Shown piece by piece: positions 22,305 to 37,155 of a stretch of 64,000 nt of DNA (the first letter of the stretch is position 1; each line of letters begins with the position of its first letter). The stretch covers positions 1,268,321 to 1,332,320 of the forward strand of contig JAKMXF010000321.1 of assembly GCA_024704765.1 (NCBI GenBank), given 5' to 3'. The stretch is from Oopsacas minuta (lineage: Eukaryota > Animalia > Porifera). Made by a program: the position numbers and the translations under genes. A model generated the notes under the pieces. The model was not told the origin of the DNA and ran no database searches. It saw only the letters and a program-made list of their open reading frames with translations.

Positions 22305-23651
22305 CAGTCTGTAACATAAATTTTGAGAATTGCTCCTATTTCTGTTGCTTCAATAATATTCGCTTAATCAAGTTATCAATAGCACAGTGCACTAATAATA
22401 CAATACTAATCAATATTTAATTGGGAATCCATTCGATTCTATGACCATTTTACAACGTCGCGGTAGTGAATCACAGTAGGGCTGAAGAAAATCAGGACTT
22501 ATGTCTGCCCACAATAATTCTAGCTCTCTCTTGAGTTCAAAAATTGCCCTGGGGCCTCGTTTCAAAAATTCTTGTTTTACCCAAGCAAACAGATTTTCAA
22601 TAGGGTTTAAATCTGGACTTTGGGATGGCCATGGTAGTTGTTTAGGGATATTTTTTATCAGAAATGCCTTAGTAACTTTAGAAGTGTGTTTGGGATCGTT
22701 ATCCATTGCCAGGCGCCATTGGTCCTGATGAAATATTTCAGCCTGGGTTAGCAAATGGCCTTCTAAAATGCGTATGAACATCTTAGCATCTATATTGTCA
22801 GTGAAGATACAGAGTGGGAATGTTCCCATTGAGCTAAATGCAGCCCATACATTAATTTTTGGGACATGTTTCGTTGTTGAAACCACACGTGTTTTCCAAG
22901 ATTTTGTCCACATTTTTATCTTTCCTCTACCGAGCCATATAGACATCTTATCGGCAAAAACTGTTTGCGCCCATGATTTTTAGGATACATGTGCTTTCTG
23001 GCCCATTTTACTCGAAAGATTCTGTTTTTTTCACTTACTAAGGGTGGATTAGATGGATATTTCTTAGTGTAATCGACCGTTTTTAAGGCACGCCAAACGG
23101 TTTCATGAGATGGCCTGCCAGGAATGAGATGGGCTAAAGACTTTGTAGACAAATATTGCCTACATCTAATTTGCTGGCCCAGACTTCTTAGAATGGAGAG
23201 TCTCATAGTAGGTGGCCTTCCAGACCCTCTCTTGCGCCCCAAACCAACAATATTTGAATCTCTAGATTTTACTCTATAGACTGTCGCCAAACTTACACCC
23301 AAAGATTTGGAAATATCCTTCATAGAAAGCTCACCACGTTTTATTAGAACATCAATTGCCTCTCTTTTCTGTTTTTCATTCATAGTTAGATCTAACAGTT
23401 TACATTATTATCAGCAAATATTAAAACAAATTATCCGGACGAAAAGTTGAAAATATTACGTCACACAAAAATTTCCGACTCCTACCCTAGTGAAAAAATG
23501 CCCAAAGAATCTAACAAAGGTCATTAATAAGTAAAAACATATCAAGTCAAGTGATTTGGAGTAGGTGGAATCCAGCTTATTACTAAACACTGAGAGTTAA
23601 TGTGGTAGGATAGTAATATATCAATTTTCTCAATTTTTATGTTACAGACTG
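22305..23651 (-). mobile_element. Full-length Tc1 (DD34E) transposon with frameshifted transposase
   Basis: TA-flanked TIR CAGTCTGTAACATAAA..TTGAGAA; ORFs 22916-23383 (HTH, GSGRP) and 22410-22946 (MDNDPKH...SPDLNPIENL, 34-residue D-E spacing) overlap out of frame. Confidence 0.9.
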
Positions 23652-26884: not shown

Positions 26885-28308
26885 CAGTGGAAGCCGCTTA
26901 ATCGGGACAGCTCGGGAGCAGGGATGTCCTGCTCTAATTATAAGTATGGGAGCGGTATTTCAAATTTCAAATTCAATTGAATATATCCTAATTTCTAATA
27001 CAAAATTCAAACAATATACCGGTAATTGAATTAATAAGATAAGTATGAATAATATCAAAGGTTTAGTAGTAAATCTGAAAATAGAGTGCTAACAAGTGAT
27101 TTAGTACCCAAGATTATTTAACCAATAATAGTTCCAAATTTCTTCTTGTTTATGGGGCTCAGAATATTATATTTCATCATTTTATATATCCTACATTCCA
27201 GAACACGTTGCTTATAATATAATTATTACTCAATTAAAAGAATCATTTGAAATAGATATTTTGTTTACGATTAACGCTAGATTCGGATAGAATAATACAT
27301 AGTTGATGTAAACTTCCCATTGTTCTTTAAAACAAGTACAATATATTCACGGCACTATAAACTAAACATTTGCTCTCTCAACTCGACTTAATTATATTTG
27401 GAACAAACTTCAATTTATTTCAAATATTGATTGTATGCTACTGTAGATATCAGGTATACAAATTCTCTAACTTGTGAAGTAATTGTGACTTCCCAATTTG
27501 ATTTGATAAAAAAAGTATGGGAGCGGCGCTCCCACTACCTAATAAACTATATGTGCGGCGCTCCCACCCGCTCCCACAGCAGGCACCACTGCTCTGGAGT
27601 CAATGTTTTGTCCCGATTAACCATTTATGATTATTTAAGTATTCAAAACTAGTTTTTCATGGTCACATTACTAGATATATCTTACTTCTATACTACTTAT
27701 CCTGATTTATCTCGGGTCTAGTAGAGATTTGGTTGTAGTAAGAGTATAGTTCCGCTTCCAGAGGTCATAAAATGCGTTACGATATTTACTTAGAAAGTAA
27801 GTAAATAAAATTTATATAATAATATACGTGCTTATTACTGTAACCAATGCAAAACGTTGGATATCCAACAATCTGGTCATTATTGAGGGAATTATACATG
27901 GTGGAATAGCCAATGGAACCTAAGGCGAGTGAGCAACGTTAATAATCTTAGTTTAGTAAATGGTAATCGGATCGGTGTTGTATTGTTATGGTTGTAGATA
28001 ATATTCAAATTCCTAGTTTTAAACAAGCCATTTTACAATGATTCTGAATAAATATACAATCGGTTAATTGGGGTAGAAATCCCAATTAAGCGAATATAAT
28101 TCATATTCTGTTAATCGGGATAAGAAATCCTGAATAACCGATTATGAACCTCCAAATATTCAGTTAATCAGGATAAAAAATCCCGATTAACCGATTCAAT
28201 GTCCCAATTATCCGACGATTTTTCTATGTAAAAATTCTGTCCCCAAACCATTGTCCCGTTTAAGCGGATATCCCGATTATCCGAGTCCTGATTAAGCGGC
28301 TTCCACTG
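26885..28308. mobile_element. Non-autonomous pogo-like element
   Basis: TA-flanked TIR CAGTGGAAGCCGCTTAATC / GATTAAGCGGCTTCCACTG; repeated AATCGGGA subterminal motifs. Confidence 0.75.
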
Positions 28309-28555: not shown

Positions 28556-31500
28556 TCATATAAATTCATGGTTCTCCATGTATGATATTCGATTTTTCTT
28601 GGTTGAGTAGGTTATTTCTCTCTGAATTCTTGCAATTTGTGGATCCCAGACAAGTAAGTAACTGTACTCGGCATTAATATTAACAAAATCGCTCGTTGAA
28701 AATTTAGAATAGAATCCTTTACCAGTAGTTAATATATATCTATTGTCGCCTAAACTATATCTCCCAAATGGCAAAGTCATTATATTAGAAATGTTCGAGG
28801 CATATCGTTGCGTGCAGAGAATAGGCTTTTGAGAAGATTGGTCTATTATGTAAAGATATCCGATATTTGTTCCTATCCATACAGAATCTTGTTTATTGTA
28901 AAACATTGAGGTTATCATGAGAAGGAATGTTGTATCAGCACGAATCCCAATCATAAATGAAGATATGTCGATGGTTCCTCTCTTCACTGGTTTTCGGATA
29001 TCCCATATTTCAATTTTGGACGATTTTAGTTCAAATGTCCATAAAGAATTATTAACAATTATGAACCCTCCAATTCTATATTGTGTAGAAATGTCCCATG
29101 TTCTCTCAAGAGATAAATCGGAAGGTTTCATCACATAAATTGTTTTGTTACTGCAAATCCATAGCCTTTGTTTTGAGATTTGAATTTGTTGTATTGGGTC
29201 AGTTGATATTTTAACGATATTTATAAGGTAGTTATCTTTGTTACTGTTAATTGCATGACCATTAATTTGTGCAATTTCCCCTCCAGTAGTACCCGCAAAC
29301 AACCTTTTCGTATCAGATGTAGAAGAAGCAAAGCAAAGCACAGCGTGGTGCAAAAAACGTAAGACATGTTTGAAACATTGTGTTGATCCATCATATACAC
29401 GAATTCCATCACAACTCCCCATAAGGATAGAATGACTGCCAACGCTAGTTATAGATAATATGGTAACGTCACATCCTAAATATTTTCCTTGTAATTTAGA
29501 GGTCATGTTTGATACATTGAGGACAGCTAATTGTGATTCATTCTCAACTTGGCTTACAATCCACAATTCGTTTGCATCTTCTCCGATATCATTTATGAAA
29601 TATCTTGTAGTCAAAACTTCCTGTTTACTAAACTGACAAATCGCTACACTTCTCTTAAGACTAAGAAAATCAGCTTCATGGAACTTTTCATATAATTGTT
29701 TGGCTGTTGGCCTCACAGTTGGATAGTATTGCAAGCAATTATCAATTAAATCCTGTAAATCAGGCCAAGAATCGTATCCATAGTGAAGCAGATCTTCGAT
29801 TGGTTTACCTTCTTCAATGGCACGATCAATTTCATTAACATATAACAGATCTTCGAAAGGTTGATGACCATTAGTAAATAAACCATAGACAAGCATACCG
29901 AAAGAATAAATATCTGTACTCTCGGTATAAGATTCTTTAGAGTAACGAACTCTCAACATCTCTGGAGACTTATACCCAGAAGTGCCAATATCTGCATAGA
30001 GTCCAGCTTTAGTAACTACGCAAGCGATTCCAAAATCTATCAGTTTTACATGAATAGAATTTTGAGAAAGTGAAAAAACCATTACATTATCGGGCTTTAG
30101 ATCTCTATAAATAATATTTTTGGAATGAATATATGACAAAGCGCTAAGAATTTGCATAGAAATTGAATGTTTCACAAGCGGAGTTATACTAGGTTCTTGT
30201 TGAAACCTTGAGAGAGATCCATATTTAGCATATTCAATTAACAGTTTAACATCAATATCAACAGAAATACCAATAATTCCTATAACGTTAGGATGTTTCA
30301 GTTTCTTAAGAATATTGAATTCTCTTCGCAACATATGATGTGGTGTTATTTCATCAATTGTCGCTGAGAATAATTTAAGTGCAATTGTTCTAGACCTATA
30401 CACTGCTTTGTATACTTCTCCAAACCCTCCTCTGCCCAACAGGGCTGCAGGATTTTGAAAATCTATCTCAAGATCTGAGCTCTTAATTTGAAGTTCGTGA
30501 TCAAGGTCAAGAAATTGTAGATCAGGGATTAAATAGTCTAATAATATTGATTTGTCTGTTTTAGGGCAAATGATAAAATTGTTTAGTTTCCAAGCTTCGA
30601 GGCACTCATGTATAGAGTATTCATTATTATCAGCGACACATAATGGACAAGGAACTGAAAACTGAATTTTTTGTGATCCATTTCGGACATTGATATCTTT
30701 GAGCTCAGGAAATCTTTCATCTATTAGTACATCCAAATGGTCTACTATTTCTCCCAATAATATATACCCTTGTTTATTTCTACAAACGATAATATCAAAA
30801 CAGTTTTCTTGTGAAACGAGGGTCTCGACAATGAGGAATGTATCTTGATTCCATAAAAAATATATTCCTTTTTGCCAAACTTCGACTTGTGGTCGTAAAT
30901 CGAGAATATTTGTGTGGACTATGATTTGGGAGAGGAAATGACCCCAAAATGTTATGGGCGTGTAAGCCATTCGAATCCTCCTGGTAATCAATGTGCTTAG
31001 ACATAGGAAAGGGAGTTTCTTTACTGGTTTTAAGATTGTTAAACCCAATGGTATGAATACTTCATTTTGTGTGGTTGGAATAACAAAATTTACGATCTCA
31101 AGTAACTTCATGTATACATGAATATACATGACTGGAAAGGCAGGTGGTCGAAAGAGATATTCAATGCACATTTCATGTAAAATTGCGTTTTTATTCAGGT
31201 AAGGATTGGGACATGGCAAATCAAATATTTTATCGGTTAAGCTTAGAATCCAGTTTGGGTTAAACACATACAATTTTTCAGGGATAGTGAAAGCACTGGA
31301 ATATATATAGACTGTGTTATTTTGATTCAAGAAGATCATCACTTGTTCTACTTCATCTTTAGTGAATTTATTGTTCAATCTAGAAGCAGAGATAATAGTT
31401 AAAATCTGGTTATGTGTCAAAACAGGAAAATCATTCTCCATTAATCTAATTCGTTCTTTAAATAATATATTCTCTAATGCTGCGTAATTTTCAGGGATCA

Positions 31501-34500
31501 TATTTCCTAGTAGTTTGTCTCCACGAATACTCGTGGTTTCCAATAGCTCTAATACATTCGCTTTGAAAGTAGATGTGTCCAAATGATACTCATGTAAACA
31601 CATATTCATTGTCTTAACACTTTCTGGGTATCCTGGTAATTCGAGCATCTCTCTAATGGTTGAGTAAACTGAGGCTGCTTGGTGAATACAACATTTATTT
31701 AGGCCGGTACATATTCCAACAAGAAGACAAAGAGCTCTAGGAGCTGCAGAATGAATTGCTAATATCCATGGCTGTATTTTCAAAGCAAACTCTGAGCCAT
31801 CAATTATGTCGTATGGTATTAAATATAATGTTCTCTCTGTGAAGAATGTTTGGTAGGTTGACAAATAGCGCAAGTTATTAGTAAAATTCCATATTTGAAT
31901 AACCATCGCTTCATTCAAATTATGTGAGTATCTCCACTCTCTTATTACAATATTTGAACTTACAACTTTATCAGGAGAATTTTTAGGGGAACAAAAGTTT
32001 AGGAAAATCTTTTGTTTAACCTTACTACTTGGCCCGAGAAAGAATATTTGGGCTCTGTTTCTTGAAACAGAGTTGTGAATTCTCGCCTGAAAATATTTCA
32101 AAATTGCTCTTGTCTTCCTACCACGAAGTGTTACTTCGAGGTTATTCAACCCAGATAGATTGAGAGCAAAGAGATTGTATAATTTTCCCACTTCTAATGG
32201 TACTTTAGCAACACTTGCATTATGACTGATATCCAAAAGTTTAAGACTAGTAAGCAGTCCTATTTCTTTTGGTATGTTCTTTAATTTGTTGTGACTAAGA
32301 TTAATTCTCTCAATTAGAGGCCAGAATTGGCAACAATCTTCGTGAAGGTGGAAAAATGTTATTTGATTGTTAGACAATATTAAATCCTTAAGTTTCCTTG
32401 AATCCCATTGTCTGGGCGATGGGCAATTCAACAATCCACATGAGCTCATATCCAGATTTCTTAATTTGGGTAGACTTGTGATAAATTTGGGAATTCTCCC
32501 ATGTTCAGTACCAACAGAGAAATCATTTCTTGACATTTTTACTACTTCAAGCATATGCATGTGTACACTAATATCATCTGGAAGTGATTCGAGTTGATTA
32601 TTTGATGCAATAATAGATTCCAGGTTTGAGCAATTAAAGAGAAAATTAGGAGGAATAGTTACCAGTTTGTTATCAGATACGTCTAGATATTTTAAGAATA
32701 TGAACCTACAATGTAACTCTGGTAACTGTAGAATTTGGTTTTTACTAATAATGAGAGTTTCTAAATAAGGAAAATTTTTTCCCAAATATTCAGGAATCAA
32801 TTCCAATCTGTTATTTGACACGTTTAGAATTTTAAGATACGAAAATCCGTCCAATGTTGGAATTGAAGTGAGATTGTTATTCATGATATTCAGATGTTGG
32901 AGGGATTGTGGTAACAAAGATTCAATAGGGAATTGTACAAAATTATTACTACTCAGATTTAGATCAATGAGTGAAGTAAATTTTTCAAACACTTCTGATT
33001 CTAGAGATGAAAGCTCATTCCCATGTAAATCAAGTAATCTTAAACCTGATAAATTATTGTAAAATTGAACTTTATTGTGATATAGATCTGCAAAGATAAA
33101 TTTTGGCAGTCTATTGTTCGACAATATTAACTTAATTAATGTATAATCTAATACTTTTCTGTGTCTGTTGGAATCCTTAAATTTCTTAAATGGGGGTTTA
33201 TTCTTACTTGAAGATTGAATATTCTTACCAAAGGTTTCTCTGGATTCATCCAAATTTTCCATCACCTGGACAAATCGTGAATGTCTCAAATCAGTTGGTT
33301 GTTGTGGCCTTAGACCCCATAATTCTTCAGAAGAGGTATTGTAACATTCATTCATAGAATCATCTGAATCACTCGCATAATATGGATTTTCAATTGCAGA
33401 ATCATTTACACTGGAACCGTTAGGTTGGGGATCAAAACAATTTTTGCTTAGCTTATTGGATATTGACAAGGAAGTAGGGCTAATTGGCTGGAAAAGAGTA
33501 TTCCCTTTTTGTTCTCGTGTATATTTTTGTGAGTTCCCATAAAGATCGCTATATTCTTTGATATTTTTCATTATAAGCTTAGGTTCTTGTTGTTTCTGTA
33601 TTGAGTATTTGAGAAACTGTTTGTTAGATTTGTTTATCATGTCATCTAGACAATTCGCACTAATTGAGTTTTCTAATCCACACTTTGAATATCTTCGATT
33701 GTGTTCAAAAGGGCCTAGTGATGAAATACATAATCCTCCAATATCAATATTAGAATTATCTTTGGGTAGAAGTGAATTAAACATGACATCCTTAATTGGG
33801 GTAATGCTACCTCTTTTATCTTCGTTTGATCTTTTGATTAAGTCTGGATGATGATGATGTAAATTTCCCATGAATGCAGAATCTTCTGATTTATTTTGAG
33901 ACATCCTACATGAATTATCATTGAGAGTGAAGTGGGAATTACTGGTTCTCTGTTCAGAAATATCAAGTGACTTCTCACATTCGCTGCTACACAAAAGAAG
34001 ATCCCCATATTTCTTTCGCAATTGAAAATGAGTGCTCACATAAGAAAATGATCCTTTGGTATTCGAGTGAATGAGATGCCTGGGGAATTCAATCGATCGT
34101 ATATTAAATAATGTTTCGAACCATTGAGCTCGAATTGATTCTAAATTCATCCCATTCATGTGTATCTCACCGAAGGTTTCTCTATTTTGAGACATATGGG
34201 CAACCAAAGTACTGACAATTTCGTGCCTATTTAGGTCGCATGCATACTTAAATGCACTTTGTATATCTGAAGCCCCTTTGGCTAAGAGATAATTTGTAAT
34301 TTCGTTACTATTATTAAATACTGCAATGCAGAGAGGAGTATCATTTCCGATTCCATAATTTACATCAGCCCCTAAGTCAATCAATAAAAATACTCCTTCA
34401 TTGATTTTATCTTTTATTGCTTTTAAAAGTAGTTGATTTTTGAAGTCCCTAACGCAACTGACTGTATACAATATTTCTGAAGTTAGTTCTAAGATGCTAA

Positions 34501-36319
34501 GAACCAATTTACTAGAAGATTGGTCTGAAGTCATTAAAATATTGAATATTATAGAATGTAGTCCTTGATTGATAAACTCTTGTGCAATTTGTGATGATAA
34601 TTCACAAAGTTTTTGAATGCATGCCAGTATTTCTGTGAGTAATTCTTCATTCTCATTACTTAATTCACAGTATATAAAGATTATTTCACAAAATTTTGCA
34701 GTTTGATTTGGTGTAAAAATTATCTCTTGAGATAACAATGTAATCAGAAAGAAAGTTTTTTTCACAAGATCTACTTGAATACAGGACTTAAGATAATCCA
34801 ATATTGTTATAATATATTCAATACAATTAGCTTTAACTAACTTAGAGAAAAATCCATGATCTGCAATGTGAATTAAAATATCTAAACCATAGTTGAAGAC
34901 TTTCTGATATCTTGTAAATTCAGAAACATTATTCATGATAATAGATATGATTGAAATTTGTAAATTGGAGTTTATCGCATCTTGGCAAAGCAATCTACTT
35001 TCCATCATCAATGAGACAAAACGAAATATCTCCTCTAGCACATCTACAATTTTATCATGTTTCTGTATTATTGTTGATAAATGTTGTAAAACGAGACAAT
35101 CATGCATGTGAGGGATCATGTCTTTGTACTTTTCGCAAAGATGTTTGAAGCGTTTTAAACAAGCTTTAAGTAATTCTGAGTATCCATCAGTATTCAAAGT
35201 ATCTAATTTATCACAATGGTCTTTAATAGCGGACATTATAGCTAAAAATACTCCACTATCTTTCAATAGATCTTTAATTTTTTCTGAATAGATTGCCAAA
35301 CAGTATACCGCAGTTGTAGCCATTTGTAATGTTTCAAGATATGCGCTATAGAGCATAACTGCAAAAACAACAGCCTTATGAATAGGCACTTCATTATCAA
35401 TTGTGTGGATGCCGATATAATTGACAGCTTCAGGGCGAGCAGTGAGAATGTGGGCAATTGCTTCGCATCCCAGAATTTGAATGCTATTAAAATTGTTGAA
35501 TTCCGACATAATAGAATCGATAAGAGATATCCACTTTAAAACATTCCTATCCAGCTTGTTCATCAGTGTAGCTTCACAATTGTGGTTGAATATTTTCATA
35601 ATAATAGAAATTAGATCAAAATTTTGTTTGAAATCTTGAGCAGTTTTGAAAGTTAAATCCATTATTTCAGTATTAGGAGTCATAGAGCATTCTTTAGAGA
35701 ATCTCAGTAAAGCCGCACATGATGCTAATTGCACCATCTCAACGTTTGAGAAAAGATGCATGGCACCGAGTACTTCGGGTATCATAAGAGAAATCGATTT
35801 GTTCCTCTGCCTAAAATCACTGAGAGCAAGTACTGATATAATGTTACAATTTATTACAGTTAAATTCTTGCAAGGAAGGACTCTTTTCGAGTGCTTAACA
35901 TTCTTCAATAAGGTAGATATTAAGTTTTCTTGTTTTTCTGTAAAAGATCCCTTCTCACAATATTCATCAGATATCAAAGCTGCTATAGATTGGTAGCCAT
36001 ATATTTGTAATTTAAGATTCAATCCACTCCCATTTAAGATTTTGATAATTTGGAATATTGACTCACAGTCAACCACGTGTTTGTTGGTTACTTCAAGTTC
36101 TGCGAGGGCAGATAAAAATTTCATTATTAAGACGTTGACGGACTTGTTTTCTTCATGAATCTCAACTACACAAATGAAGTTTGTATAAGTTGCGCAAGTG
36201 AATATAACATTTTGGAAAATAGAAAGAGAATCAATCGAATTGCATGTATACCAACAGACGCCAAAGTTTGTGCGACATTTATTACGTGTAAATCTTTCAA
36301 AAAACAAAAACATATTCAA
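28556..36319 (-). CDS. LRRK2: Leucine-rich repeat kinase 2 (Roco family): ARM-ANK-LRR-ROC-COR-kinase-WD40; 5' end probably incomplete
   Basis: 2587-aa ORF. ARM segment SIQILGCEAI...PIHKAVVFAVMLYS aligns to human HVQEAACWAL...PAHREVMLSMLMHS; ANK LLIDLGADVN; LRRs (LILSNNRL, LDLHGNEL); COR MAYTPITFW vs MPYFPMGFW; kinase GRGGFG, IALK, YRDLKPDN, DFG, SPE; C-terminal WD40-like repeats. The ARM region favours LRRK2 over LRRK1. Confidence 0.93.
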   Translation of the reverse strand: MNMFLFFERFTRNKCRTNFGVCWYTCNSIDSLSIFQNVIFTCATYTNFICVVEIHEENKSVNVLIMKFLSALAELEVTNKHVVDCESIFQIIKILNGSGLNLKLQIYGYQSIAALISDEYCEKGSFTEKQENLISTLLKNVKHSKRVLPCKNLTVINCNIISVLALSDFRQRNKSISLMIPEVLGAMHLFSNVEMVQLASCAALLRFSKECSMTPNTEIMDLTFKTAQDFKQNFDLISIIMKIFNHNCEATLMNKLDRNVLKWISLIDSIMSEFNNFNSIQILGCEAIAHILTARPEAVNYIGIHTIDNEVPIHKAVVFAVMLYSAYLETLQMATTAVYCLAIYSEKIKDLLKDSGVFLAIMSAIKDHCDKLDTLNTDGYSELLKACLKRFKHLCEKYKDMIPHMHDCLVLQHLSTIIQKHDKIVDVLEEIFRFVSLMMESRLLCQDAINSNLQISIISIIMNNVSEFTRYQKVFNYGLDILIHIADHGFFSKLVKANCIEYIITILDYLKSCIQVDLVKKTFFLITLLSQEIIFTPNQTAKFCEIIFIYCELSNENEELLTEILACIQKLCELSSQIAQEFINQGLHSIIFNILMTSDQSSSKLVLSILELTSEILYTVSCVRDFKNQLLLKAIKDKINEGVFLLIDLGADVNYGIGNDTPLCIAVFNNSNEITNYLLAKGASDIQSAFKYACDLNRHEIVSTLVAHMSQNRETFGEIHMNGMNLESIRAQWFETLFNIRSIEFPRHLIHSNTKGSFSYVSTHFQLRKKYGDLLLCSSECEKSLDISEQRTSNSHFTLNDNSCRMSQNKSEDSAFMGNLHHHHPDLIKRSNEDKRGSITPIKDVMFNSLLPKDNSNIDIGGLCISSLGPFEHNRRYSKCGLENSISANCLDDMINKSNKQFLKYSIQKQQEPKLIMKNIKEYSDLYGNSQKYTREQKGNTLFQPISPTSLSISNKLSKNCFDPQPNGSSVNDSAIENPYYASDSDDSMNECYNTSSEELWGLRPQQPTDLRHSRFVQVMENLDESRETFGKNIQSSSKNKPPFKKFKDSNRHRKVLDYTLIKLILSNNRLPKFIFADLYHNKVQFYNNLSGLRLLDLHGNELSSLESEVFEKFTSLIDLNLSSNNFVQFPIESLLPQSLQHLNIMNNNLTSIPTLDGFSYLKILNVSNNRLELIPEYLGKNFPYLETLIISKNQILQLPELHCRFIFLKYLDVSDNKLVTIPPNFLFNCSNLESIIASNNQLESLPDDISVHMHMLEVVKMSRNDFSVGTEHGRIPKFITSLPKLRNLDMSSCGLLNCPSPRQWDSRKLKDLILSNNQITFFHLHEDCCQFWPLIERINLSHNKLKNIPKEIGLLTSLKLLDISHNASVAKVPLEVGKLYNLFALNLSGLNNLEVTLRGRKTRAILKYFQARIHNSVSRNRAQIFFLGPSSKVKQKIFLNFCSPKNSPDKVVSSNIVIREWRYSHNLNEAMVIQIWNFTNNLRYLSTYQTFFTERTLYLIPYDIIDGSEFALKIQPWILAIHSAAPRALCLLVGICTGLNKCCIHQAASVYSTIREMLELPGYPESVKTMNMCLHEYHLDTSTFKANVLELLETTSIRGDKLLGNMIPENYAALENILFKERIRLMENDFPVLTHNQILTIISASRLNNKFTKDEVEQVMIFLNQNNTVYIYSSAFTIPEKLYVFNPNWILSLTDKIFDLPCPNPYLNKNAILHEMCIEYLFRPPAFPVMYIHVYMKLLEIVNFVIPTTQNEVFIPLGLTILKPVKKLPFLCLSTLITRRIRMAYTPITFWGHFLSQIIVHTNILDLRPQVEVWQKGIYFLWNQDTFLIVETLVSQENCFDIIVCRNKQGYILLGEIVDHLDVLIDERFPELKDINVRNGSQKIQFSVPCPLCVADNNEYSIHECLEAWKLNNFIICPKTDKSILLDYLIPDLQFLDLDHELQIKSSDLEIDFQNPAALLGRGGFGEVYKAVYRSRTIALKLFSATIDEITPHHMLRREFNILKKLKHPNVIGIIGISVDIDVKLLIEYAKYGSLSRFQQEPSITPLVKHSISMQILSALSYIHSKNIIYRDLKPDNVMVFSLSQNSIHVKLIDFGIACVVTKAGLYADIGTSGYKSPEMLRVRYSKESYTESTDIYSFGMLVYGLFTNGHQPFEDLLYVNEIDRAIEEGKPIEDLLHYGYDSWPDLQDLIDNCLQYYPTVRPTAKQLYEKFHEADFLSLKRSVAICQFSKQEVLTTRYFINDIGEDANELWIVSQVENESQLAVLNVSNMTSKLQGKYLGCDVTILSITSVGSHSILMGSCDGIRVYDGSTQCFKHVLRFLHHAVLCFASSTSDTKRLFAGTTGGEIAQINGHAINSNKDNYLINIVKISTDPIQQIQISKQRLWICSNKTIYVMKPSDLSLERTWDISTQYRIGGFIIVNNSLWTFELKSSKIEIWDIRKPVKRGTIDISSFMIGIRADTTFLLMITSMFYNKQDSVWIGTNIGYLYIIDQSSQKPILCTQRYASNISNIMTLPFGRYSLGDNRYILTTGKGFYSKFSTSDFVNINAEYSYLLVWDPQIARIQREITYSTKKNRISYMENHEFI

Positions 36320-36503: not shown

Positions 36504-37155
36504 TTAGAAACCTTTAAACTTTCTACGTACAGTTGAAATCGGAGTATTTTCTCCATTTGATTGCACTGCCAAAACAATACTTTTAATCTTCGCTCTGAAC
36601 TTAAATTGTGCCAATTGAGGAATTTTGGGTAATGAGTGATAGACTTTATATCCATAAAAGTTGTCAGCCAATCTATCGTACAGGTTTGATCTCAATTTGA
36701 ACATCATGGAATAAACTTCGGGATTGAATCTTATTATTCTCATGTTTTTTGAGAGATTGCTGAAATACATTCATATAGTATGTATGAAATTGATAAAACA
36801 TTCCCTAAAATATTATTCGCCATCACCATCTAATTGATGTTCTTGGTCTTTGATAATTTCCCATACATTTCGGACACTCTTCCTGGAAAGTTTCAAGAAG
36901 TAGACATCCACAGGAGGCAGCTTTCTCTGGTAGATATGTAATTACTTCATTAATATCACAACCAAAAATAGTGTCACAAAGTTCAACAAATGCTTGGCAA
37001 GAATGACTTTTCAGACTAAGCTTGTGAGGAATATATTCTTCAGCAATTTGCTTACAGATTTGAATCTTCTGAGCATAATAATGCAAACTCTGCACGAAAC
37101 CAAAAGATGAGAGTAACCAAACCCAATTTGTTGAGAAAAAATATATAAAGCACAA
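36504..37155 (-). CDS. Candidate upstream exon(s) of LRRK2 (ORFs 36823-37155 and 36504-36770)
   Basis: GCLLLETFQEECPKCM resembles human LRRK2 N-terminal GWSLLCKLIEVCPGTM; same strand and adjacent to the main ORF, which lacks about 100-160 N-terminal ARM residues. Splice sites not resolved. Confidence 0.4.

What the first reader, a model, noticed from the sequence alone, without database searches (positions are those of the whole stretch)
31545..32065. LRRK2 with an apparent pseudo-GTPase ROC domain but intact kinase
Seen: P-loop GPSSKVKQ (32012-32035) instead of human GNTGSGKT (G1346 to V, T1348 to Q), switch I Thr replaced (VSSNI vs ATVGI), G3 WNFTN (31877-31891) instead of WDFAG, and G4 GICTG instead of GTHLD. 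The kinase keeps GxGxxG, the beta-3 Lys, the alpha-C Glu, YRDLKPDN and DFG, and the ORF is uninterrupted over 2587 codons. Established: T1348N abolishes nucleotide binding in human LRRK2, and ROC nucleotide state is thought to regulate the kinase. Inference: a naturally GTP-independent LRRK2, a useful natural experiment on ROC-kinase coupling.
Basis: partly seen in the sequence, partly recalled or inferred. Interest (0 to 1): 0.8.

Follow-up and report, generated by a model that had tools for sequence, protein, structure and literature searches.

The report
Glass-sponge LRRK2 with dead GTPase domain
The glass sponge Oopsacas minuta carries a single-exon version of the Parkinson's-disease kinase LRRK2 whose built-in GTPase switch has lost every nucleotide-binding motif while the kinase looks intact, so it is a natural test of whether the kinase needs that switch.

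Summary
Window 28556-36124 (-) encodes a 2522-residue ARM-ANK-LRR-ROC-COR-kinase-WD40 protein of Oopsacas minuta (contig JAKMXF010000321.1).

**Orthology.** Trees place it inside the LRRK2 clade, sister to the demosponge LRRK2-likes, on a branch about four times longer. No second LRRK2-clade protein from this genome appeared in an exhaustive search.

**ROC domain.** It reads GPSSKVKQ / WNFTNN / VGICTG where 26 other LRRK2-clade proteins carry GxxxxGK[ST] / WDFxG / VGTHxD. The one exception, Styela, is described below. No alternative Walker A, DxxG or NKxD exists in residues 1300-1600. ROC identity to orthologues is about half the usual, whereas the kinase and LRR are near normal.

**Not an error or decay.**
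- Four runs from two studies carry the gene.
- The only indel is in frame.
- dN/dS is about 0.3, also within ROC.
- AlphaFold still predicts an LRRK-type ROC-COR fold.

**Kinase.** All catalytic motifs are kept, but it has DFG instead of DYG, a change that hyperactivates human LRRK2.

**Not unique.** The ascidian Styela clava LRRK2-like shows the same combination independently. First-stage notes of this scan flag degenerate ROCs in other Roco genes of this genome.

GTP independence and expression remain untested. I rate it a new variant of a known kind, of moderate to high interest.

The parts
28556..36124 (-). Single-exon CDS (2522 aa plus stop) of the Oopsacas minuta LRRK2 orthologue (P0001)
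   Evidence: ORF list; translation; Pfam ARM_LRRK2/ANK/LRR/Roc/Pkinase/Beta-prop_LRRK2; best PDB match human LRRK2 at 3e-159; the gene call is identical in GCA_024704765.1
34505..36124 (-). ARM-repeat region (aa 1-540), weakly recognisable
   Evidence: PF23744 ARM_LRRK2 at 18.8 bits, below its cut-off; 14-17% identity to orthologues
34190..34495 (-). Ankyrin repeats (aa 544-645)
   Evidence: PF12796 and PF23745
32105..33076 (-). Leucine-rich repeats (aa about 1017-1340)
   Evidence: LRR_8 and LRR_4; 35-37% identity to orthologues, the same as between canonical LRRK2s
31490..32104 (-). ROC domain (aa 1341-1545), predicted pseudo-GTPase
   Evidence: Pfam Roc at only 25.4 bits (cut-off 27) against 72.5 for Ephydatia; 21-24% identity against 41-54% among canonical LRRK2s; G-domain fold predicted
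32012..32035 (-). Degenerate P-loop GPSSKVKQ (human G1346 to V, T1348 to Q; Lys kept)
31946..31963 (-). Switch I region VSSNIV (Thr to Ser, following Gly to Asn)
31874..31891 (-). Degenerate G3 WNFTNN (Asp to Asn, Gly to Asn)
   Evidence: the only change here in the second organism is synonymous
31703..31720 (-). Degenerate G4 VGICTG (or IC insert plus TGLN); Asp lost
   Evidence: the Thr codon change in the second organism is synonymous
30485..31489 (-). COR domain (aa 1546-1880), divergent
   Evidence: No Pfam COR-A or COR-B hit, but it aligns collinearly with human LRRK2 COR and is modelled with high pLDDT
29675..30484 (-). Protein kinase domain with all catalytic motifs; DFG at 30029-30037 instead of the clade-typical DYG
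   Evidence: Pkinase at 164 bits; motifs; DFG/DYG survey
28646..29662 (-). LRRK2-type WD40 beta-propeller (aa 2155-2493)
   Evidence: PF23748 at 96.5 bits
33389..33390 (.). Site of an in-frame 21-nt insertion polymorphism in the disordered linker; the only indel seen in 5.9 kb across four runs
   Evidence: table 4

Best explanation
This is the LRRK2 orthologue of the hexactinellid sponge Oopsacas minuta. It is fast-evolving and intronless. Its ROC domain has become a pseudo-GTPase: it keeps the G-domain fold and its place between LRR and COR, but it has lost the residues that hold the phosphates, Mg2+ and the guanine base. The losses, with their Ras equivalents, are G15 to V, S17 to Q, D57 to N, G60 to N, and the NKxD Asp. 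It therefore most likely binds no guanine nucleotide and serves as a static scaffold. The kinase keeps every catalytic residue and is presumably active without a ROC nucleotide cycle. The DYG-to-DFG change, which hyperactivates human LRRK2, may be what lets the kinase work without nucleotide-loaded ROC. Shown here: orthology, motif loss, sequence correctness, purifying selection and the predicted fold. Inferred: no GTP binding, an active kinase and compensation by DFG.
For: Architecture and best matches point to LRRK2. LRRK2-clade placement has 100% support, sister to Ephydatia plus Amphimedon, with an end branch of 1.56-1.74 against 0.36-0.44. The motifs are degenerate, whereas 26 other LRRK2-clade proteins bar one (Styela) are canonical. 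No alternative motifs exist. Divergence is ROC-specific, and Pfam Roc falls below its cut-off. X1, X3 and X4 show no change at the motif codons, and the only indel is an in-frame 21 nt. Listed differences give 18 synonymous to 22 non-synonymous against a synonymous-site share of 0.207 (p = 5e-4). The ROC part gives 8:8, dN/dS about 0.26, p = 0.01. The AF2 ROC-COR model has pLDDT 88.7, and its best Foldseek matches are LRRK1 and LRRK2 at TM 0.78-0.81. Human T1348N and K1347A abolish GTP binding and greatly reduce kinase activity (PMC3155532). Human Y2018F (DYG to DFG) is hyperactive (PMC6660771). There is an independent parallel in Styela clava.
Against: There is no biochemical evidence. The P-loop Lys and a switch I Ser are kept, so weak or non-canonical nucleotide or phosphate binding is not excluded. 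AlphaFold driven by an alignment of canonical GTPases would return a G-fold anyway. No RNA run was found, so expression is not shown here. The selection estimate rests on 40 listed differences from low-depth contigs of one close relative plus within-sample variants. The protein's long branch and odd composition make fine placement within the clade uncertain (SH-aLRT 90 for the sponge grouping). The DFG link rests on two or three lineages.
Confidence: 0.7

Rival explanations
1. The ROC domain still binds a nucleotide, either GTP through the retained Lys and backbone or another ligand such as ATP or XTP, in a non-canonical way. On this reading it remains a regulatory switch and is not a pseudo-GTPase.
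For: The P-loop Lys and a hydroxyl residue at switch I are kept. Under the alternative G4 alignment THLD becomes TGLN, and an Asp-to-Asn change at that position switches specificity to xanthine nucleotides in other GTPases (established knowledge). ROC is under purifying selection. A similar SK[VS]K[QA] P-loop arose independently in Corticium and a relative, which hints at a selected alternative pocket.
Against: Four separate contact classes are lost together: the P-loop Gly, the P-loop Ser/Thr, the G3 Asp and Gly, and the G4 Asp. Single changes at the P-loop positions already abolish binding in human LRRK2 (PMC3155532). No such non-canonical ROC has been described in the papers searched.
Confidence: 0.12
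2. The gene is a relaxed or decaying copy, for example a processed retrocopy that replaced or survives the parent. On this reading the ROC changes are drift in a protein losing function as a whole.
For: It is a single 7.6-kb exon, whereas the Ephydatia orthologue has at least 41 coding blocks over 32 kb. It has a very long branch. ARM, COR and WD40 are also weakened. No RNA run was found.
Against: A 2587-codon open frame persists in 34% G+C DNA. Two organisms differ by about 2.5-3% with no frame-breaking change. dN/dS is about 0.3 overall and in ROC. All kinase catalytic residues are intact. There is no poly(A) remnant downstream. O. minuta genes average only 1.59 introns (PMC10280926), so lack of introns is not unusual there.
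Confidence: 0.1
3. The degenerate motifs are assembly or sequencing errors, or an artefact of alignment.
For: None found. The P-loop codons of the second organism (X5) were among the differences not listed.
Against: A 8759-nt contig of X1 and contigs of X3 and X4 cover the region with no change at the motif codons. All 14 + 2 of their differences are listed and lie elsewhere or are synonymous. Three alignment methods agree, and no motif exists within 300 residues.
Confidence: 0.02

Closest known systems
Human LRRK2 (for example PDB 7LHT, 8FO9, 9OYA)
   Same: Same seven-domain order. It is the best sequence match in PDB (3e-159). The ROC-COR model superposes at TM up to 0.81. It shares the YRDLKPxN catalytic loop and the LRRK2-type propeller.
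   Different: Human ROC has GNTGSGKT, T1368, DFAG and THLD, and needs GTP-binding capacity for kinase activity (PMC3155532). Here all are lost except the Lys. Human has DYG, here DFG. Identity is about 25-35%. The human gene has many exons; here there is one.
Demosponge LRRK2-like proteins: Ephydatia muelleri EMCRGX_G027636 (P0002) and Amphimedon queenslandica XP_019853727.1 (P0293)
   Same: They are the nearest relatives in both trees, with the same architecture.
   Different: They have canonical ROC (GAEAKGKT / WDFAGQ / VGTHLD), DYG, Pfam Roc at 72.5 bits and COR-A/B detected. Their branches are about four times shorter, and the Ephydatia gene has at least 41 coding blocks.
Styela clava LRRK2-like (XP_039266821.2, P0283/P0166)
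   Same: It is an LRRK2-clade member with a fully degenerate ROC (GYPSEWRT, LCDVNI, no Pfam Roc hit). Its kinase is intact and carries DFG.
   Different: This is an independent event in tunicates: its sister Clavelina is canonical with DYG. Even the P-loop Lys is lost, and no LRRK2 propeller hit is found.
Corticium candelabrum 'LRRK1-like' XP_062502621.1 (P0256) and P0181
   Same: The degenerate P-loop and G3 are strikingly similar: GYQSKVKQ and WNFTGF against GPSSKVKQ and WNFTNN.
   Different: It belongs to a different, sponge-expanded Roco clade. The AU test rejects a common clade (p 1e-15), so the likeness is convergent. Its kinase is also degenerate (HRN, DFR), and it has no ARM domain.
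PseudoGTPases in general (for example CENP-M and the p190RhoGAP pG domains; from my own knowledge)
   Same: A G-domain fold is retained as a structural module after loss of the nucleotide-binding motifs.
   Different: Those are stand-alone or GAP-embedded domains. No ROC domain of an LRRK2 orthologue was described as one in the papers I could search.

Membership tests
LRRK2 orthologue group (Roco kinases) | Domain order ARM-ANK-LRR-ROC-COR-kinase-WD40 with an LRRK2-type propeller | tested here: met
   Pfam (ARM and Roc below their cut-offs, propeller 96.5 bits, kinase 164 bits); collinear HMMER alignment to human LRRK2 residues 1002-2466
LRRK2 orthologue group (Roco kinases) | Phylogenetic placement inside the LRRK2 clade, apart from LRRK1 and the other Roco clades | tested here: met
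   FastTree 100* with 24 rows; IQ-TREE LG+C20 100* with 18 rows; the alternative clade with Corticium is rejected
LRRK2 orthologue group (Roco kinases) | Functional ROC G-motifs: GxxxxGK[ST], switch I Thr, DxxG and [NT]KxD-type THxD | tested here: not met
   Only the Lys and a Ser at switch I remain.
LRRK2 orthologue group (Roco kinases) | Catalytically competent kinase motifs: GxGxxG, beta-3 Lys, alpha-C Glu, YRDLKPxN, D[YF]G and APE-like | tested here: met
   DFG replaces the clade-typical DYG.
LRRK2 orthologue group (Roco kinases) | GTP binding or hydrolysis and Rab phosphorylation | not testable with these tools
   Needs recombinant protein.
PseudoGTPase | G-domain fold retained | tested here: met
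   AF2 pLDDT 88.7 with beta1/P-loop/alpha1 topology; Foldseek hits to LRRK1/2 ROC-COR and to Rab GTPases. This is a prediction only.
PseudoGTPase | Loss of consensus nucleotide-binding residues while the domain stays under selection | tested here: met
   Motifs; ROC codons 1389-1545 give 8 synonymous to 8 non-synonymous, dN/dS about 0.26, p 0.01
PseudoGTPase | Demonstrated absence of nucleotide binding or catalysis | not testable with these tools
   Biochemistry required.

The most novel reading that the evidence does not exclude
LRRK2 lineages can dispense with the ROC nucleotide cycle provided the kinase's DYG brake is released. On this reading, loss of the ROC G-motifs and the DYG-to-DFG change are coupled, recurrent events (glass sponge and ascidian, with a partial case in Oscarella). 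That would imply the essential job of nucleotide-loaded ROC in canonical LRRK2 is to overcome that brake.
Probability: 0.2. Interest if true: 0.8.

Novelty: new variant of a known kind. Interest (0 to 1): 0.6.

Why it matters
In human LRRK2, the capacity to bind guanine nucleotide is required for kinase activity, and Parkinson's mutations in ROC-COR act through the kinase. How the two domains are coupled is still debated.

A natural LRRK2 orthologue keeps its kinase under selection after losing every ROC nucleotide contact, and an ascidian shows an independent second case. Both carry the DFG variant that hyperactivates the human enzyme. Together they give a concrete and cheap hypothesis to test: P-loop-dead human LRRK2 with and without Y2018F. 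They also give two natural proteins for structural comparison of a nucleotide-free ROC-COR-kinase unit.

The finding also documents a complete loss of 40 or more introns in a very large gene of a glass sponge.

Tried and rejected
- **ROC fragment search.** A word-index search with the ROC fragment alone, meant to catch fragmentary hexactinellid orthologues, gave no hit at E <= 0.001.
- **Metagenome scan.** It returned only two weak kinase matches at 36% over 60 aa, which were irrelevant.
- **RNA evidence.** No holder run is on record as RNA. The 8759-nt X1 contig spanning the gene looked transcript-like. I rejected that reading because the run has a 107-kb contig and the contig ends in a short-repeat cluster.
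- **Common origin with Corticium.** The SKVKQ/WNFT likeness suggested a shared origin with the Corticium Roco, but the tree and the AU test reject it. ROC-only phmmer also ranks LRRK2-clade ROCs first, so a swapped-in ROC is unlikely.
- **Young retrocopy.** There is no poly(A) tract downstream.
- **Missing N-terminal ARM repeats.** Upstream ORFs gave no ARM hit.
- **Literature.** Searches for a pseudoGTPase ROC or LRRK2 found nothing relevant.
- **DYR paralogue.** A DYR-type LRRK-like paralogue is noted elsewhere in this genome, but it was not among the roughly 300 proteins fetched.
- **Technical.** The first full-length MAFFT run timed out and was replaced by domain-wise alignments.

Full report
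**What is in the window.** One open frame of 2587 codons lies on the minus strand at 28556-36319. From the first ATG at 36124 it encodes 2522 residues. Pfam finds ARM_LRRK2 (weak), ankyrin repeats, leucine-rich repeats, Roc (25.4 bits, just under the 27-bit cut-off), Pkinase (164 bits) and the LRRK2 beta-propeller (96.5 bits). COR-A and COR-B are not detected. The best solved-structure relative is human LRRK2 (E 3e-159, collinear over query 1017-2456), ahead of LRRK1 (E 9e-72).

The same protein is called on NCBI assembly GCA_024704765.1, contig JAKMXF010000321.1. JAKMXF is the whole-genome project of the glass sponge Oopsacas minuta (PMC10280926). Earlier notes of this scan also call the genome a glass sponge.

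**The observation.** HMMER against human LRRK2 and MAFFT with 13, 9 and about 90 Roco proteins agree on the following:

| Motif | Human LRRK2 | This protein | Window coordinates |
|---|---|---|---|
| P-loop | GNTGSGKT | GPSSKVKQ | 32012-32035 |
| Switch I | ATVGI | VSSNI (Thr becomes Ser) | within 31946-31963 |
| G3 | WDFAG | WNFTN | 31877-31891 |
| G4 | VGTHLD | VGICTG | 31703-31720 |

One alignment instead reads G4 as a two-residue insert followed by TGLN. The Asp is lost under either reading. No Walker A, DxxG or [NT]KxD string exists anywhere in residues 1300-1600. The kinase has GRGGFG, the beta-3 Lys, the alpha-C Glu, YRDLKPDN, DFG and SPE. The only nuance is that the switch I replacement is a conservative Ser.

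**Is it really LRRK2?**
- An exhaustive HMMER search of 1.84 billion representatives with ROC-COR-kinase found nothing above 33% identity. The top hits are LRRK2-like proteins of a hemichordate, a sea star, amphioxus, molluscs and sponges.
- In a FastTree of 80 Roco kinases, the protein sits inside the LRRK2 clade with 100% support. An IQ-TREE (LG+C20) tree of 41 rows gives the same placement with 100% support.
- Within the clade it is sister to Ephydatia muelleri plus Amphimedon queenslandica LRRK2-likes (support 95 and 90).
- Its end branch is 1.56-1.74, against 0.36-0.44 for the demosponges. It is a fast-evolving orthologue.
- None of the other LRRK2-clade rows comes from this genome, as far as their names or composition show.
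- Other Roco genes do exist in O. minuta according to earlier notes, some with canonical Roc-COR. I did not check these.

**How degenerate is ROC?** Of 27 LRRK2-clade proteins examined, the sequences covering the motifs carry GxxxxGK[ST] and W[DE]xxG, except this one and Styela clava. Domain by domain, ROC identity to orthologues is 21-24%, where canonical LRRK2s share 41-54% with each other. The kinase is 38-47% against 46-62%. The LRR is 35-37%, unchanged. The loss of constraint is therefore concentrated in ROC and, less strongly, in COR.

**Real sequence, still under selection.**
- Contigs of four runs from two studies cover the gene.
- All differences of the three same-sample runs are listed (2 for X1, 14 for each of X3 and X4). 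None changes a motif residue.
- The only indel in 5.9 kb is an in-frame 21-nt insertion behind 33389.
- A run of a second organism (X5) differs by about 2.5-3%. Of its 29 listed differences, 13 are synonymous.
- Pooling all listed variants gives 18 synonymous to 22 non-synonymous. Only 20.7% of sites are synonymous, so p = 5e-4 and dN/dS is about 0.3.
- Within ROC codons 1389-1545 the count is 8:8, giving dN/dS of about 0.26 and p = 0.01.
- The changes falling in the G3 and G4 motif codons are synonymous.

These are small numbers from low-depth contigs, but they argue against neutral decay of ROC.

**Fold.** AlphaFold2 on residues 1336-1885 with a 46-row alignment gives mean pLDDT 88.7 and pTM 0.87. 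The model has a normal G-domain topology. Confidence is lower only around switch I, the G4 loop and the G5 loop. Foldseek's best matches are LRRK1 and LRRK2 ROC-COR at TM 0.78-0.81, then bacterial Roco proteins and Rab GTPases. Because the alignment is dominated by canonical GTPases, this shows compatibility with the fold and is not proof of it.

**Parallels found on the way.**
- *Styela clava.* Its LRRK2-like protein (XP_039266821.2) has an even more degenerate ROC: P-loop GYPSEWRT, G3 LCDVNI and no Pfam Roc hit. Its kinase is intact with GEGGFG, VAIK, YRDLKPDN, DFG and APE. Its sister Clavelina is canonical. This is an independent loss.
- *DFG and ROC divergence.* Only three LRRK2-clade proteins have DFG instead of DYG: Oopsacas, Styela and Oscarella. 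Those three also have the most divergent ROCs; Oscarella has ExxG at G3 and 26% ROC identity. In human LRRK2, Y2018F (DYG to DFG) creates a hyperactive kinase (PMC6660771). T1348N and K1347A abolish GTP binding and greatly reduce kinase activity (PMC3155532). The link is suggestive but rests on two or three events.
- *Corticium candelabrum.* A Roco of this sponge has GYQSKVKQ and WNFTGF, close to this protein's motifs. It belongs to another clade, and the AU test rejects joining them (p 1e-15). The likeness is convergent.

**Gene structure.** The Ephydatia orthologue spans 32 kb with at least 41 coding blocks. The Oopsacas gene is a single 7.6-kb exon. O. minuta averages 1.59 introns per gene. 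No poly(A) remnant follows the stop codon. I therefore cannot decide between retroposition with loss of the parent gene and cDNA-mediated intron loss.

**Most likely mechanism.** The ROC domain is a structural pseudo-GTPase that no longer binds guanine nucleotide. It holds LRR, COR and kinase in place. The kinase is active and is regulated by other means, with DFG possibly compensating. I put this at about 0.7. The rivals are:
- non-canonical nucleotide binding through the retained Lys (about 0.12);
- a relaxed or decaying copy (about 0.1);
- sequence or alignment error (about 0.02).

**Limits.**
- There is no expression evidence, because no RNA run is on record.
- No other hexactinellid orthologue could be fetched.
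- The P-loop codons of the second organism were among the unlisted differences.
- The O. minuta genome itself could not be scanned directly.

Noticed in passing
P0283 / P0166 (Styela clava XP_039266821.2), not in the window: An ascidian LRRK2-like protein has independently lost all ROC G-motifs and has no Pfam Roc hit. It keeps an intact kinase with DFG, while its sister Clavelina is canonical with DYG.
   Followed up: partly
P0256 / P0206 (Corticium candelabrum XP_062502621.1) and P0181: A homoscleromorph sponge Roco from a different clade has a near-identical degenerate P-loop and G3 (GYQSKVKQ, WNFTGF). This is convergent by AU test. Its kinase is also degenerate (HRN, DFR).
   Followed up: yes
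window 28556-36124 against L002:1001-32989: The Oopsacas gene is a single exon, while the Ephydatia orthologue has at least 41 coding blocks over 32 kb. That is a complete intron loss in a 7.6-kb coding sequence, either by retroposition or by cDNA-mediated loss.
   Followed up: partly
window 33389: An in-frame 21-nt insertion is present in runs X3, X4 and X5 (with one base different in X5) but absent from the window and X1. It is a length polymorphism in the disordered linker between ANK and LRR.
   Followed up: no
window 28055-28300: A cluster of short direct and inverted repeat units (ATCCCGATTAACCGAT-like, spacing about 50 nt) lies 250-500 nt downstream of the stop codon. One run's contig ends there. 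Its nature is unknown, possibly MITE-like.
   Followed up: partly
window 36826-37155 (-): A 110-codon ORF upstream of the LRRK2 start has weak hits to a thioredoxin-like domain (E 0.0012) and to the PPPDE peptidase C-terminal part (E 0.035). It may be an exon of a neighbouring gene. It is not ARM-like.
   Followed up: partly
window 22410-22946 (-): A called gene with a DDE_3 transposase domain (PF13358) lies about 6 kb downstream of the LRRK2 gene.
   Followed up: no
P0117 (Oscarella pearsei LRRK2-like): This homoscleromorph LRRK2 has a canonical P-loop, but it has ExxG at G3, only 26% ROC identity and DFG. It may be an intermediate state.
   Followed up: partly
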